This document shows, in pieces, positions 35,641 to 60,135 of a DNA stretch of 64,000 nt. This stretch comes from Octopus sinensis (lineage: Eukaryota). Made by a program: the position numbers and the translations under genes. Under the pieces are notes generated by a model. That model ran no database searches, was not told where the DNA came from, and saw only the letters and a list, made by a program, of their open reading frames with translations. Position 1 is the first letter of the stretch. Each line of letters begins with the position of its first letter. The stretch is taken from positions 35,526,001-35,590,000 of the forward strand of contig NC_042998.1 of assembly GCF_006345805.1 (NCBI RefSeq). The letters are read 5' to 3'.

Positions 35641-35862
35641 TTATTTATTTACCTCCAAGGGTAAGATAAAGAGACCATAAAGAATTTTACCAACAGCTTC
35701 AATAGCTTTGAAACTTTCTTTGGGTGATTTAATGGTAGAATCTTTCTTCACGTTCTTTAGATCGTAGCCAAGGCAGAAGAGAAGTTTCAAAGCCCAATCG
35801 TATTCCAACAGAGGCACCACAATATCTTTACCAATATCTTTCTTCATTAGACTGCAACTGAA
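35641..35862 (-). CDS. GSDME: Gasdermin terminal coding exon F: FSCSLMKKDIGKDIVVPLLEYDWALKLLFCLGYDLKNVKKDSTIKSPKESFKAIEAVGKILYGLFILPLEVNK*
   Basis: Acceptor ttttttttacag|TTC; 73 codons plus TAA at 35643-35641. Ends in ILYGLFIL, like the terminal helix of gasdermin C-domains (GSDME ITLNGLCAL). Confidence 0.85.
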   Translation of the reverse strand, partial: FSCSLMKKDIGKDIVVPLLEYDWALKLLFCLGYDLKNVKKDSTIKSPKESFKAIEAVGKILYGLFILPLEVNK

Positions 35863-36171
35863 CTGTAAAAAAAAAACAAAAACAGGCAACAATTAAATAT
35901 CATTTAATTACCCAAATGTATTAATGTCCACTCTCTAACACATACATCATCCACTCTTTTTCATTTAATTGCTCTGCTTTTTCATCTTCCAGACTCAATT
36001 TCTTCCACCAAAGCAAAGCAGCCTCTATGTGATTGTTTGAACTGCTAGAAATAACAGCTCATTCCAGCATTGATATCTATATGGCACCCAGTTATTCCCT
36101 GCTAAGCTAAGATATTCTCTCGGTTTTTTTTTTCAATCTTTTCACTCACTCACTCACTCATTCATTATTAA

Positions 36172-36479
36172 CTAGCAGTATCGCCCGGCGTTGCTTGGGT
36201 TTGTAAGGGAAATAACTATATAAGCATTTTTAGAGAGTTACTTCCCTTATATAAACCGAGCAAAAAATGCATTAACAATGCGAAAAAATGATGGTAAATT
36301 TTTTTATAATCGTAGACTCATCGTAGACGCGCGCTAATACCCAGAAGGGCTCGATATGAATCATGTCTATAAGATACCCGCTTTTGGTTAAACTGCACCG
36401 CAAAATGTGGGAGTAGTTAGGAATCTAAATCGGAGGAGACAGACTCTCACACACACAACTTCAGTTTTATATATAAAGA
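36172..36479 (-). mobile_element. Non-autonomous Helitron-like element (in the last gasdermin intron)
   Basis: 5' TC(TTTATATAT) and 3' hairpin plus CTAG, nearly identical to the end at 212. Confidence 0.65.
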
Positions 36480-36962
36480 TATGCATTATTTATTAATATC
36501 TACTTCTGTAAGCTAATTATTTAAATTGACTCTTCAATATATAACTTCCTAATCTCTCTCTCTCAGCCTTAGTTTTCTCCTTAATTCTTCATGCTTAGCT
36601 CTCCTTCCCTCCTCTGTTCCCAAGTTGGCTACATATTTTTTCATACTCTCTCTTAAATTAACCCTTGCTTATTTGCGGTGCACCTGCCCATTCCCACCCC
36701 ACCACCAATACTGGATATCTCTTTTCTCTCACCAGAAACCCCCTCCCTCACTTGTGGTGTCCTCTATCATACCTGCAATTTCACCTCCCTCCTCGCCTGG
36801 AACAAATGCAACTAGTTTAGCCACCCACCTACTTAATCTAACATTGGCATAATCATATTTACTTTTGTCTATTTATACTTATATCTGCAGCACCAGTAAT
36901 GCTTAAATCTATGATGTTCATAATGCTTATACTTACAACACCGCTAACACTCACTCCTACCC

Positions 36963-37497
36963 CCAGAATCGAAGGGCCTTAGGAGTCAATGTTGCAAAGA
37001 CCAATGTCCTAGTAAGTAGGAAGGTGAACAAATCACAAACCCCTTCAGGTAAGTGGCCCTGCTCGATCTGTAGAAAAGGTGTAGGTAGAAACGCCATAAG
37101 ATGTACCTAGTGTAAGCTATGGATGCATAAGAGGTGCAGCAACCTCAAAGGAAGGTTCACCAGGAAGATAGCTTTTGTGTGCAGCAGATGTACAGGGGTA
37201 ATAAACATCGAATATGCTCAGGAAACAGATTCTATCACATGCTAGGGGGAGAAACTAGAAGTAGTTGATAGCTTCCGCTACCTAGGTGACCAAGTCCGTA
37301 ATGGGGGAAGATGCTCGGAGATCATCAAGACTAGAATAAGAATAGCCTGAGCAAAGTTCTGAAAGCTCCTACCTCTACTGGTGACAAAGGGCCTCTCGCT
37401 CAGAGTGTGCATACTGCCATGCTTCACAGCAGTGAAACATGGGCCATGACTGTTGAGGACATACATAGGCTTGAAAGAAATGAAGCTAGTATGATCC
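36963..37497 (+). mobile_element. Degraded internal fragment of the RTE LINE family
   Basis: Colinear with 28185-28720 (gaatcgaagggcctta...gtagttgatagcttccgctaccta), with in-frame stops. Confidence 0.85.
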
Positions 37498-56579: not shown

Positions 56580-58929
56580 GCTAAACATTCGAAAATAAGG
56601 AAAGTTTTAAAATGGAAATGTTAGGGTATTCTTTGAAAATTCCCCATCAACCTGGTTCCCAAAATGTCACTGCAGATTGCATTAGTTCCATTATCTTTGA
56701 TCATTACTATTATGCCAATATAGAAACAATACCACAATCAACTACAAAAGCCAGGAATCATCATCATCATCATCATCGTTTAACGTCCGTTTTCCATGCT
56801 AGCATGGGTTGGATGGATAATAAGAGCACAGCAGGGATCGCCACCACCCCCTGCCGGAGCCTCATGGAGCTTTAGGTGTTTTCGCTCAATAAACACTCAC
56901 AACGCCCAGTCTGGGAATCGAAACCGCGATCCTACGACCGCGAGTCCACTGCCCTAACCACCGGGTCATTGCGCCTCCAATAAAATGACAAACTTCATTC
57001 TGTTGAAAGGAGGCTATCATCCATGCAGAATCGAAAATTTCCCAGGAAATATGTTAATAACTGTTCAATTTGGTCACATTTCTGTAATGCAAACAATGAA
57101 TTCCTCAAGACAACTAAGCACTTCAAAAGATTTATCAAGGATTTCAAAGGGCTTCTTCCAACAAAAAAACCAAACAAGAATTTTATATCTTATATCTTTT
57201 ATTTGTTTCAGTCACCAGAGTGCAGCCATGCTGGAGCACTGCCATGAAGAATTTTAGTTGAACAAATCAAACCTAGTTAGATTTTTTAAAGTCTCTTTTG
57301 CCTTGCCAAACCACTAAGTTATAGGGATATAAACACACCAACACCAGTTGCTAAGTGGTGGTAGGGACACACACACACACACACACACACATAAATATAT
57401 ACAATGGCCTTCTTTCAGTTTCTTATTTCTTTATTGCCCACAAGGGGCTAAACATAGAGGGGACAAACAAGGACAGACAAAGGGATTAAGTAGATTACAT
57501 CAACCCAGTGCGTAACTGGTTCTTAATTTATCGACCCCGAAAGGATGAAAGGCAAAGTCGACCTCGCCAGAATTTGAACTCAGAACTTAACGGTAGATGA
57601 AATACTGCTAAGCATTTCGCCCAACATGCTAACGATTCTGCCAGCTCACCGCCTTTCAGTTTCTGTCTACCAAATCCATTCACAAGTTCCGAGGCTATAG
57701 TAGAAGACTCCTCCCCACAGTGAGACTGAACCTAGAACCATATGGTTGTGAAGCAAGTTTCTTAGTACACAGTCACACCCACACCTATGTTAATCCCAAT
57801 GAATTTGCTTTGCTTTTGTCTTTCCTTGCAAGGACCAAATACTTGAACCTTTAATTATGTCTGACCAATTTATTTTCTCTAATTGGCTGCCCTATTTCAT
57901 CCATTCTCTGAGCCAGCCTTCACACTTCCCCAAAATGGATGGTTTTGTTATCCAAGCATAACACTGTCGATAGTTTTGGTATATCCTACAATCTACAAGA
58001 GAATGGGATGTGTTTTCAGAGAAATGGTAATGTTTGGAGAGATTTAACCCTTTAGCATTTAAGCCAGCCAAAACCGGCCTAAAATATTCTATTTATTTTA
58101 GATTCAAACCAGCTTGATCATGCCTTTCACACCCACTCTACAATGTCATTGTAAAAATAAACAATCACATCGCTGAAATTTGAAAGCTATGAGATAATGC
58201 AGGATTAATTTGAGACATTGTGAATAGATAAGTTTTACATTTGACAGAGTAATCTGAATACTAAAGGATTAACTGTTGTTAGCCGAAAATGTCTTGCCAA
58301 TCATATGGGAATTGGTGGCACCTGATATACAGCATTTCATTCAAACTCTCCTCTACAACTCTACCAACAACACACAATCATCATCGCCACCATCGTCATT
58401 GTCATTTAATGTCCACTTCCATGCTGGCATGGGTTCGATGGTTCGACTGGGGACTGGCAAGCCAGAAGGCTGCACTAGGATCCAATCTGATCTGGCAGTG
58501 TTTCTACAGTTGCATGCCCTTCCTAATGCTAACCACTCTGAGAGTGTAGTGGGTGCTTTTACATGCCACTGGCACGAAGGCCAGTCAGGCAGTACTGGCA
58601 TCAGCCACACTTGAATGGTGCTTTTTAAGTGCCAAACGCACGAGGCCCAGTCAGGCAGCACTGGCATTGACCATGCTCGAATGGTGCTTTTTATGTGCCA
58701 CCAGCATGGGTGCCAATCAGGTGGCACTGTCATCAGCCACAACAACAACTATTTTTTCAATTTTACTCAAAGAATGTCATCAGGGACACCCTTACTCCAT
58801 CTGCTAGCAGACTCTGCAGAAACAGTGGAATTGGAAAGGATTATACAAAATGCAAAGTCAATGATAGATCCTGTAGAATTAATTGAAGCCAAAACTAAGA
58901 AGGATTTAGTTTGCAAAGCTTTCAAGCCT

Positions 58930-59300
58930 ACTACGCATGTCCTCTTCAGTCACAGCCCACGTTTCACTGCTGTGAAGCATGGCAGTTCGCACACATGCAT
59001 TGTACAAATTACCTTTCACTATGAGCAAGAGGCCCTTTGTCACCAGTAGGGGTAGAAGCTTTCTAAACTTTCTTATTCTAGTGGTAACACTCTCTGATCA
59101 TCCACCACCACTACTAATTTGGTCACCTAGGTAGCGGAAGCTATCAACTACTTCTAGTTTCTTCCCCCGTCATGTGATGGAATCTGTTTTCTGAGTATCT
59201 GTGGTGTTTATTGCCCCTGTGCACATGAAAGCTATCTTCCGGTTAATCTTCCTTTGATGTTGCTGCACCTCTTATGTGTCCATAGATTACACTGGGTACA
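58930..59300 (-). mobile_element. Degraded RTE LINE fragment
   Basis: The reverse complement matches 28330-28700 (gtagttgatagcttccgctacctagg, agtgaaacgtgggctgtgactgaagaggacatgcgt). Confidence 0.8.
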
Positions 59301-59981
59301 TCTTTCCATATATTATTAGCAAAATATTTTGAGTGGCTGTGTAGTAAGTAGCTTACTTACCAACCACATGGTTCCAGGTTCAGTCCCACTGTGTGGCACC
59401 TTGCGCAAGTGTCTTCTACTATAGTCTTGGGCCAACCAAAGCCTTGTGAGTGGATTTAGTAGACAGAAACTGAAAGAAGCCCATCGTGTGTGTGTGTGTG
59501 TGTGTGTGTTCGTCCCTCCCCAACAATGCTTGACATGCGATGCTGGTGTGTTTACGTCCCTGTAACATAGTGGTTCGGCAAAAAGAGACCGATAGAATAA
59601 GTACTAGGCTTACAAAGAATAAGTCCTGGGGTCGATTTGCTCAACTAAAAGGTGGTGCTCCAGCATGGCCACAGTCAAATTACTGAAACAAGTAAAATAA
59701 TATAAGAATTAAAGAATAAACTATTTTTCTGTTTTGTTTATATAATTATTATTATTATTATTATTATTTTCTTCCAGTTTCAGAAAACCAGTCTTAAGAG
59801 AATGCTCAGGCAAAGATTGTTTGGTAATGAAATCCAAATTCAATATATATATTTACTTCTTGTATTCTTTTCAAGATGGTCCTATTCTTTGAACCTTCTT
59901 GGAACAAACAACTCGGTTTCAAAGTTCCTAATTCTATCGAAACAAAGAGGAATTTGTTACTTTGTCAAAGACAGTACTCAC

Positions 59982-60135
59982 CACATTGGTTTTGATTTTA
60001 CCATCCTCTGACAGAGTGCTTTGTTTGGCAATTTTCAAATCCGACACAGGGTAGACTACACCCGTTATGACACAAAGAACTTCATGAGATTTCTTCTTCA
60101 TTCGCTTTACAATGCAATTGTCAAAGTCTATATAC
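59982..60135 (-). CDS. GSDME: Gasdermin E/pejvakin-like gene, first in-window coding exon (exon A), pore-forming domain: (R)YIDFDNCIVKRMKKKSHEVLCVITGVVYPVSDLKIAKQSTLSEDGKIKTNV
   Basis: Acceptor ttttttttctcttgttccag|G and donor GTG|gtgagt; 154 nt, phase 2 to 0, open frame. Matches the remembered GSDME segment RTINLRNPVLQQ...NEVLCVLTQ and PJVK RKINFDHSLIRQ...AVLCVV. Confidence 0.9.

What the first reader, a model, noticed from the sequence alone, without database searches (positions are those of the whole stretch)
35641..60135. Cephalopod gasdermin (GSDME/PJVK-like pore-forming pyroptosis effector) hidden as six small exons among repeats
Seen in sequence: six exons with canonical splice sites and compatible phases (2-0, 0-1, 1-0, 0-0, 0-0, 0-stop) join into one uninterrupted 324-aa frame over 24.5 kb. 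Exons B, C and E do not appear in their coding frame in the ORF track, so ORF-based annotation would miss the gene. Established knowledge: EVLCV and AY.V.EL...DG...C...GGF are signatures of the gasdermin pore-forming domain (GSDME, PJVK), and caspase-activated GSDME-like proteins are known in corals and some molluscs. Inference: this is an intact two-domain gasdermin of about 460 aa, implying an octopus pyroptosis pathway. I am not aware of a functional characterisation of a cephalopod gasdermin.
Basis: partly seen in the sequence, partly recalled or inferred. Interest (0 to 1): 0.9.

Follow-up and report, generated by a model that had tools for sequence, protein, structure and literature searches.

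The report
Octopus gasdermin gene, already annotated
The six small exons are real and encode the last 324 residues of the octopus gasdermin, a likely cell-killing pore protein, but the gene is already in public annotation and in a published gasdermin phylogeny, so it is not a new discovery.

Summary
On the minus strand, six exons (60135-59982, 53158-52954, 46772-46660, 43697-43572, 42289-42134, 35862-35641) have canonical splice sites and the stated phases. They join into 324 codons plus a stop.

That peptide equals residues 141-464 of XP_029658425.1, "uncharacterized protein LOC115232596" of Octopus sinensis. Window 25641-64000 is 100% identical to that gene's locus on CM016860.1. An octopus meta-transcriptome contig aligns to the window in six blocks that abut exactly at these junctions.

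The full protein matches Pfam Gasdermin end to end (84.8 bits). Human GSDME-NT is the best solved relative. dN/dS against the other octopus is 0.19. A D-x-x-D motif directly after the pore domain is invariant in six cephalopods and is the likely caspase site.

- The gene is not hidden. It is annotated in O. sinensis, O. bimaculoides, O. vulgaris and Argonauta. The O. bimaculoides orthologue A0A0L8I419 is the "Octopus gsdm" of Angosto-Bazarra et al. 2022.
- There is one upstream coding exon (aa 1-140), not two. It lies about 44.6 kb beyond the window.
- The C-terminal 213 aa has no detectable similarity to Gasdermin_C, and AlphaFold2 gave no usable model.

Function remains untested. Novelty is low.

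The parts
59982..60135 (-). It holds the last base of codon 140 plus residues 141-191 and includes the EVLCV motif of the pore-forming domain.
   Evidence: Sequence read: acceptor ccAG, donor GTGAGT. tblastn of P0001. Transcript block L001 468-617. Pfam Gasdermin 14.7 bits alone and 45.1 bits when joined to exon B.
52954..53158 (-). Coding exon 3 (exon B), residues 192-259 plus one base. It holds the last strands of the pore-forming domain (AYNVVELKIHPDGTIGVC...GGF) and the start of the linker.
   Evidence: acceptor ttAG, donor GTAAGT. 100% match to P0001 residues 192-259. Transcript block L001 617-822. Alignment to human GSDME 203-245.
52979..52990 (-). Codons D248-V-V-D251 (gat gtg gtt gac), directly after GGF. 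This is the candidate caspase-type D-x-x-D cleavage site.
   Evidence: Sequence read. D248 and D251 are invariant in six cephalopod orthologues (DVVD, DVLD, DIPD) at 53-95% overall identity to P0001. A D-x-x-D site is reported as conserved in invertebrate GSDME (PMC11508797). Cleavage itself is not tested.
46660..46772 (-). Coding exon 4 (exon C), residues 260-297. It holds the invariant LFYPPEEV motif of the linker and the first predicted helix of the C-terminal region.
   Evidence: acceptor ctAG at 46774-46773, donor GTAAGT. The in-phase alternative acceptors at 46751 and 46739 are rejected by P0001 and by transcript block L001 823-935 = 46772-46660.
43572..43697 (-). Coding exon 5 (exon D), residues 298-339.
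   Evidence: acceptor tcAG, donor GTAAGT. tblastn 100% over 42 aa. Transcript block L001 935-1061.
42134..42289 (-). Coding exon 6 (exon E), residues 340-391.
   Evidence: acceptor acAG, donor GTAAGT. Transcript block L001 1062-1217 = 42289-42134.
35567..35862 (-). Last exon (exon F). The coding part is 35862-35641 (residues 392-464 plus TAA). The 3'UTR continues to at least 35567.
   Evidence: acceptor acAG, stop TAA at 35643-35641. Transcript block L001 1217-1511 = 35863-35567 runs colinear past the stop.
2658..2726 (-). Alternative terminal coding exon (FNSRNQISFNSLFCGKTASGVK plus stop) of the 483-aa O. vulgaris isoform CAI9718629.1. It would be reached from the internal donor GAG|GTAAAT at 35653/35652 in exon F.
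   Evidence: tblastn of P0009 residues 465-483 gives 100% at 2717-2661. Strong pyrimidine tract plus AG acceptor and TAG stop read. There is no transcript evidence here; it is only a predicted isoform.

Best explanation
Window 35641-60135 (minus strand) holds coding exons 2-7 of the gasdermin gene of Octopus sinensis: LOC115232596, protein XP_029658425.1, 464 aa. Only one copy is seen in this window. From the window corresponds to CM016860.1:35,526,001-35,590,000. Coding exon 1 (aa 1-140) lies about 44.6 kb beyond the window end.

Shown:
- The gene model is correct.
- It is transcribed and spliced in this way in a related octopus.
- It is conserved across octopods and more distant cephalopods, and is under purifying selection.
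- Residues 1-247 are a complete gasdermin pore-forming domain, closest to vertebrate GSDME.

Inferred mechanism:
- The protein sits in the cytosol with its roughly 210-residue, predicted all-helical C-terminal region masking the N-terminal domain.
- An executioner-type caspase cuts after D251 in the invariant G-G-F-D-x-x-D motif at the domain boundary.
- The freed fragment of about 251 residues binds acidic lipids through the invariant basic/aromatic loop K38-H-K-K...F44-W45.
- It oligomerises into a beta-barrel pore and lyses the cell (pyroptosis), as shown for coral, Hydra, oyster, abalone and vertebrate GSDME.
For: Identity:
- The exon B peptide hits P0001 at 100%.
- P0001 is XP_029658425.1 of O. 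sinensis.
- Window 25641-64000 is 100% identical over 38,360 bp to the gene's locus.
- Exon 1 plus the six exons translate exactly to P0001.

Splicing and expression:
- Contig L001 comes from run SRR3401912, described as an octopus meta-transcriptome (PMC11662614).
- It carries an uninterrupted 460-aa ORF and aligns to the window in blocks that abut at every junction.
- Full-length ORFs sit on 1.6-2.8-kb contigs from seven further runs.

Constraint:
- dN/dS is 0.19 overall, 0.11 for the exon A-B part and 0.20 for the linker plus C-terminal region, at dS 0.37.
- Orthologues at 53-95% identity all have intact frames.

Family:
- Pfam PF04598 scores 84.8 bits over profile positions 1-238 of 240.
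- Human GSDME-NT scores E 8.7e-13 over residues 7-248.

Mechanism cues:
- D248 and D251 are invariant directly after GGF.
- The KHKK..FWQ loop is invariant and aligns with KKKRFWCWQ of human GSDME.
- The literature reports D-x-x-D sites and caspase-3-dependent GSDME action in invertebrates, including molluscs (PMC11508797, PMC12122919, PMC8742441).
Against: - Nothing here tests cleavage, pore formation or cell death.
- The C-terminal 213 aa has no detectable similarity to Pfam Gasdermin_C, to any PDB chain, or to the Gasdermin_C-positive tail of a fish gasdermin. Autoinhibition by a canonical repressor domain is therefore assumed, not shown.
- Both AlphaFold2 runs failed (mean pLDDT 33 and 30). 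The helical C-terminal prediction is low confidence.
- The D-x-x-D motif lies about 20 residues closer to the GGF motif than DMPD270 of human GSDME. In O. sinensis it is followed by Leu at P1', which is not a preferred caspase P1' residue (established knowledge). It could be conserved for structural reasons.
- No transcript from O. sinensis itself was examined.
Confidence: 0.8

Rival explanations
1. It is a real, expressed gasdermin-family gene, but not a caspase-gated pyroptosis executioner of the GSDME type. The C-terminal region would be a cephalopod-specific module. The protein would then be regulated in another way (another protease, redox, lipidation) or have a non-lytic role, as proposed for PJVK.
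For: - The C-terminal 213 aa gives no Gasdermin_C, PDB or hhalign signal, even though it is well conserved within cephalopods.
- Invertebrate gasdermins do not group cleanly with GSDME rather than PJVK (PMC8742441).
- P1' after D251 is Leu in O. sinensis.
Against: - The length, position and predicted all-helical nature of the region fit a gasdermin repressor domain (low confidence).
- D-x-x-D at the domain boundary is invariant across six cephalopods.
- The membrane-anchoring basic/aromatic loop is conserved.
- The functionally studied mollusc, cnidarian and amphioxus homologues are lytic and caspase-dependent.
- PF17708 may simply be too vertebrate-centred to detect invertebrate tails (my inference).
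Confidence: 0.17
2. It is a decaying pseudogene or a chance chain of open frames that annotation pipelines have over-predicted.
For: - The exons are small and scattered over 24.5 kb of repeat-rich sequence.
- Splice-site scoring alone also yields false candidates of equal or better score nearby.
Against: - The exact exon chain is present in a spliced octopus transcript.
- The frame is intact in five other cephalopod sequences.
- dN/dS is 0.19.
- The Pfam domain is complete.
Confidence: 0.01
3. One reading: a previously unnoticed cephalopod gasdermin that standard annotation misses.
For: - RefSeq names the product only 'uncharacterized protein'.
- No paper on the function of a cephalopod gasdermin was found in the held library.
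Against: - Full-length models exist in RefSeq, GenBank and UniProt for four species.
- UniProt titles two of them 'Gasdermin pore forming domain-containing protein'.
- A0A0L8I419 is tabulated as the Octopus bimaculoides gsdm gene and used for phylogeny and synteny in PMC8742441.
Confidence: 0.02

Closest known systems
Octopus bimaculoides gsdm (UniProt A0A0L8I419 = XP_014790989.1) and the O. vulgaris models CAI9718630.1 / CAI9718629.1
   Same: They are orthologues: 464 aa, 95% identity for O. bimaculoides, in the same 90% cluster. The same six-exon footprint is found in the window by tblastn. The O. bimaculoides protein is already treated as the octopus gasdermin in Angosto-Bazarra et al. 2022.
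   Different: They come from different species. The RefSeq entry for the O. sinensis gene in this window is still named 'uncharacterized protein LOC115232596'. O. vulgaris also has a predicted 483-aa isoform with a distal last exon (window 2726-2658).
Vertebrate GSDME (DFNA5), human GSDME N-terminal domain structures 9vlz, 9h5m, 9pe0
   Same: It is the best solved-structure relative, with an end-to-end alignment of the pore-forming domain (residues 7-248 against 7-245, E 8.7e-13). Shared features are EVLCV, AY.V.EL..DG...C....GGF, the KKK.FW.WQ loop, and a D-x-x-D motif after the domain.
   Different: - The shared motifs sit in a weak alignment (51 bits over about 240 residues).
- The D-x-x-D abuts GGF instead of lying about 22 residues downstream (DMPD270).
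- The C-terminal region shows no detectable similarity to Gasdermin_C.
Functionally studied invertebrate gasdermins: oyster CgGSDME, abalone GSDME, coral OfGSDME, Hydra HyGSDME, amphioxus GSDME
   Same: Each of these invertebrates is described with a GSDME/PJVK-like gasdermin. They have a D-x-x-D linker site, depend on caspase-3-type enzymes, and are lytic (PMC11508797, PMC12122919, PMC8742441).
   Different: No sequence of these could be obtained, so similarity was not measured. The word-indexed searches returned only cephalopod proteins. The octopus protein has no functional data.
PJVK (pejvakin, DFNB59)
   Same: It belongs to the same GSDME/PJVK branch of the family. In one published tree invertebrate gasdermins share a node with PJVK.
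   Different: [quoted passage not shown] The octopus protein keeps a conserved tail of about 213 aa and the basic/aromatic loop.

Membership tests
Gasdermin family (Pfam PF04598 pore-forming domain) | Complete N-terminal pore-forming domain above the curated Pfam threshold | tested here: met
   P0001 scores 84.8 bits (cut-off 25), residues 1-247 against profile 1-238 of 240. The part encoded in the window (exons A+B) scores 45.1 bits on profile 137-238.
Gasdermin family | Sequence relatedness to gasdermins of solved structure | tested here: met
   Human GSDME-NT scores E 8.7e-13 over residues 7-248. A 'Gasdermin pore forming domain-containing protein' (8jyw/8jyv) scores E 0.012.
Gasdermin family | Basic/aromatic membrane-anchoring loop near the N-terminus (the KKK.FW type loop of GSDME) | tested here: met
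   K38 H39 K40 K41 F44 W45 Q46 are invariant in six cephalopods and align with KKKRFWCWQ of human GSDME. The loop lies in exon 1, outside the window.
Two-domain (autoinhibited) gasdermins: GSDMA-E | C-terminal repressor domain recognisable as Gasdermin_C (PF17708) or by fold | tested here: inconclusive
   - No PF17708 hit for the window tail, for P0001 or for any of six cephalopod tails.
- The PDB profile search found nothing.
- hhalign against a fish gasdermin that does carry PF17708 gave probability 0.14.
- AlphaFold2 mean pLDDT was 33 and 30, so no fold comparison was made.
- Only the length (213 aa), the conservation and a low-confidence all-helix prediction fit.
GSDME-type gasdermins | Caspase-3/7-type D-x-x-D cleavage motif between the two domains | tested here: met
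   D248-x-x-D251 is invariant (DVVD, DVLD, DIPD) immediately after the end of the Pfam domain. This shows the motif only; cleavage is not tested.
GSDME-type gasdermins | Cleavage by caspase releases a fragment that forms membrane pores and kills the cell | not testable with these tools
   This needs protein expression, caspase digestion, and liposome or LDH assays.
Functional gene (as opposed to pseudogene) | Intact frame, spliced transcript, purifying selection | tested here: met
   The CDS translates exactly to P0001. The cross-species transcript matches all junctions. dN/dS is 0.19. Transcripts from O. sinensis itself were not examined.
PJVK | Gasdermin N-domain with only a short C-terminal tail (repressor domain lost) | tested here: not met
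   The octopus protein has 213 conserved residues after D251.

The most novel reading that the evidence does not exclude
The conserved C-terminal region of about 213 residues in cephalopod gasdermins might not be a diverged Gasdermin_C repressor domain. It could be a lineage-specific regulatory module, giving a different way of holding a gasdermin pore domain in check or of triggering it. The evidence does not exclude this. No sequence or profile method found any link to known gasdermin C-terminal domains, and structure prediction failed. The plainer reading, a canonical fold diverged beyond sequence detection, is more likely.
Probability: 0.12. Interest if true: 0.45.

Novelty: already known. 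Interest (0 to 1): 0.15.

Why it matters
As a discovery it matters little. The gene is already modelled in four cephalopod genomes, and its O. bimaculoides orthologue already serves as the octopus gasdermin in the literature.

What remains open is function. No cephalopod gasdermin has been tested. The invariant GGF-D-x-x-D boundary gives a precise, cheap hypothesis: cleavage after D251. Comparative-immunology groups could test it alongside the oyster, abalone, coral and Hydra proteins.

The finding is also a useful positive control for the scan. A reader without tools recovered a 7-exon gene's last six exons, phases and protein length correctly from raw sequence.

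Tried and rejected
1. The search for homologous proteins with the joined A+B peptide found nothing, although a 100% identical protein is in the collection. This was a miss of the word index, not absence.
I did not work around this. I used the exon B peptide alone, and later the public protein P0001.
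3. My first exon C used the acceptor at 46751, which has the better pyrimidine tract. The acceptor at 46739 was also possible.
4. The stop-free segment 35924-36058 looked protein-like, but its phases do not fit. It is absent from the protein and the transcript, so it is not an exon.
5. I searched for the N-terminal exons inside the window. A three-frame Pfam scan of 60136-61950 and a tblastn with aa 1-140 were both negative. The exon lies outside the window.
6. The splice-site and ORF chaining script did not single out the true exons; false candidates scored as high.
7. For the C-terminal domain, Pfam on single sequences and on six orthologues, phmmer and profile searches of the PDB, and hhalign against a Gasdermin_C-positive fish protein were all negative.
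8. AlphaFold2 on the single sequence and on a 5-sequence alignment gave pLDDT 33 and 30. I ran no fold search, because matches to such models are meaningless.
9. A profile search with the cephalopod alignment returned no non-cephalopod homologues. No phylogeny with other molluscs could therefore be built.
10. The Rfam scan of the window found no family.

Full report
**What is in the sequence**

The gene lies on the minus strand. I read each candidate exon and its flanks. There are six exons with canonical splice sites:

| Exon | Window coordinates | Acceptor | Donor |
|---|---|---|---|
| A | 60135-59982 | ccAG | GTGAGT |
| B | 53158-52954 | ttAG | GTAAGT |
| C | 46772-46660 | ctAG | GTAAGT |
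| D | 43697-43572 | tcAG | GTAAGT |
| E | 42289-42134 | acAG | GTAAGT |
| F | 35862-35641 | acAG | ends in TAA |

The phases are 2-0, 0-1, 1-0, 0-0, 0-0 and 0-stop. The total is 976 nt, which is one leading base plus 324 codons plus the stop. My own first model used a nearby in-phase acceptor for exon C (46751).

**Is it a gasdermin?**

- Exon A alone gives only a weak Pfam hit (14.7 bits).
- A joined to B reaches PF04598 "Gasdermin pore forming domain" at 45.1 bits against a cut-off of 25. It covers profile positions 137-238 of 240 without a break at the junction.
- The same peptide finds the human GSDME N-terminal domain structures at E about 1.5e-7.
- The remaining 198 aa (exons C-F) match nothing in Pfam or the PDB.

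**Whose gene is it?**

A full HMMER scan of 1.84 billion representatives with the exon B peptide returned a 464-aa protein at 100% identity (P0001). P0001 contains the entire 324-aa chain as its residues 141-464.

It is XP_029658425.1, "uncharacterized protein LOC115232596 [Octopus sinensis]". Its 90% cluster also holds:
- O. bimaculoides XP_014790989.1 = UniProt A0A0L8I419.
- Two O. vulgaris models, CAI9718630.1 and CAI9718629.1.
- UniProt titles the O. bimaculoides and O. vulgaris entries "Gasdermin pore forming domain-containing protein".

The genomic place of P0001 (L009, CM016860.1 of GCA_006345805.1) is 100% identical to window 25641-64000 over 38,360 bp. From those coordinates the window is CM016860.1:35,526,001-35,590,000.

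Residues 1-140 are encoded by one exon at L009 10001-10419, with donor AG|GTAAAA. That position is about 44.6 kb beyond the window end. The introns measure 48,043, 6,823, 6,181, 2,962, 1,282 and 6,271 bp, and the CDS spans 72,957 bp. Exon 1 plus the six window exons translate exactly to P0001. There is thus one missing upstream coding exon, not two.

**Is it already known?**

Yes. Angosto-Bazarra et al. 2022 (PMC8742441) list A0A0L8I419 as the Octopus bimaculoides gsdm gene. They use it in their invertebrate phylogeny and synteny figure.

Further full-length relatives were returned by the word-indexed search:
- Argonauta hians (77% identity).
- P0020 (84%), from a Logan assembly.
- P0022 (56%) and P0023 (53%), from Logan assemblies.

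I found no paper that tests a cephalopod gasdermin functionally.

**Is the gene real and in use?**

- Contig L001 (1,511 nt) comes from run SRR3401912, which PMC11662614 describes as an octopus meta-transcriptome.
- It carries an uninterrupted 460-aa ORF.
- It aligns to the window in six blocks, at transcript positions 468-617, 617-822, 823-935, 935-1061, 1062-1217 and 1217-1511.
- The block ends coincide with the six exon boundaries. The last block runs 74 nt past the stop into the 3'UTR.
- A seventh block covers exon 1 with its 5'UTR in L009.
- This is cross-species transcript evidence for every junction. RNA-seq from O. sinensis itself was not available to me.
- Nei-Gojobori dN/dS between the O. 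sinensis CDS and L001 is 0.19 (dS 0.37). It is 0.11 for the exon A-B part and 0.20 for the linker plus C-terminal part.
- The exons are unique in the window, while 38.5% of the gene interval consists of interspersed repeats present in up to 15 copies.

The pseudogene and chance readings are excluded.

**How it probably works**

The full protein matches Pfam Gasdermin from position 1 to 238 of 240 (84.8 bits). It aligns with human GSDME-NT over residues 7-248 (E 8.7e-13).

Two functional cues are invariant across six cephalopod sequences at 53-95% identity to P0001:
- The basic/aromatic loop K38-H-K-K..F44-W45-Q46, aligned with KKKRFWCWQ of human GSDME.
- A D-x-x-D motif (DVVD, DVLD or DIPD) that starts at the residue after the closing GGF of the pore domain. 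Its window codons are 52990-52979 in exon B.

The other Asp-containing candidates in the linker (ELTD279, SLVD283) are not conserved in the more distant sequences. D-x-x-D linker sites and caspase-3-type activation are reported for invertebrate GSDMEs, including molluscs (PMC11508797; PMC12122919).

My best explanation is therefore a cytosolic, autoinhibited gasdermin. It would be cut after D251 by an executioner caspase, releasing a pore-forming fragment of about 251 residues. The gene model, expression in a relative, constraint and N-domain membership are shown. Cleavage, autoinhibition and lysis are inferred.

**What is not established**

The second domain is not established. Residues 252-464 are conserved within cephalopods, with 94 invariant positions among six sequences. 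The following tests all failed to link them to known gasdermin C-terminal domains:
- No PF17708 hit in any orthologue.
- No PDB hit with a profile.
- hhalign probability 0.14 against a fish gasdermin that does carry PF17708.

AlphaFold2 gave mean pLDDT 33 on the single sequence and 30 on five sequences, so I made no fold comparison. Both poor models are all-helical from about residue 270. That fits a gasdermin repressor domain but carries little weight.

This leaves a minority reading in which the tail is a lineage-specific module. The simpler view is divergence beyond sequence detection.

**Verdict**

The claim of a hidden, unannotated gene is wrong, as is the expected number of upstream exons. 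The locus is an already annotated and already published member of a known family. Only the absence of functional work leaves something to do.

Noticed in passing
window 2658-2726 (minus), with donor at 35653/35652: A possible alternative last coding exon lies 33 kb downstream of the normal stop. It encodes FNSRNQISFNSLFCGKTASGVK* behind a strong pyrimidine tract and AG. It matches the tail of the 483-aa O. vulgaris isoform CAI9718629.1 at 100%. It would be spliced from GAG|GTAAAT, 9 nt before the stop codon of exon F.
   Followed up: partly
window 26107-28476 (+): A non-LTR retrotransposon is broken into three ORFs. Pfam finds Exo_endo_phos_2 (27.7 bits) and RVT_1 (90.4 bits) followed by a PHD/C1-like zinc finger. 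It sits in the GC-richer stretch 26-32 kb.
   Followed up: partly
window 5822-6298 (minus); 7246-7752 (+); 45143-45850 (minus, inside the intron between exons C and D): These look like Tc1/mariner-type transposase remnants. The first has a DDE_3 hit (50 bits). The others look like HTH and DDE pieces by eye but gave no Pfam hit.
   Followed up: partly
window 3349-3822 and 25358-26222: Long TA/CA-rich low-complexity tracts give overlapping '[10 protein letters not shown]' ORFs of up to 277 aa on both strands. They are artefacts of the ORF listing, not genes.
   Followed up: no
window, many sites, e.g. 39160-39518, 46005-46354, 48970-49431, 56051-56579, 59318-59739: An interspersed repeat family is present in 10-15 copies within the window. 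Its translation repeatedly reads '...[13 protein letters not shown]...'. It is probably an abundant octopus SINE-like element. No Rfam family reached its gathering score anywhere in the window.
   Followed up: no
protein collection (not the window): The 90% cluster of P0001 also lists unrelated 55-aa proteins from metagenomes (P0012-P0019). The first word-indexed search with a 119-aa exact sub-sequence of P0001 failed to retrieve it. Both look like tool or collection artefacts worth knowing about.
   Followed up: no
L009 10001-10419 (outside the window, about 44.6 kb beyond base 64000): Coding exon 1 encodes residues 1-140 in one piece. Read through its donor (AG|GTAAAA) it ends in R-stop. This explains why a 140-aa ORF (P0015) is called on genomic Logan contigs of a related octopus.
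   Followed up: yes
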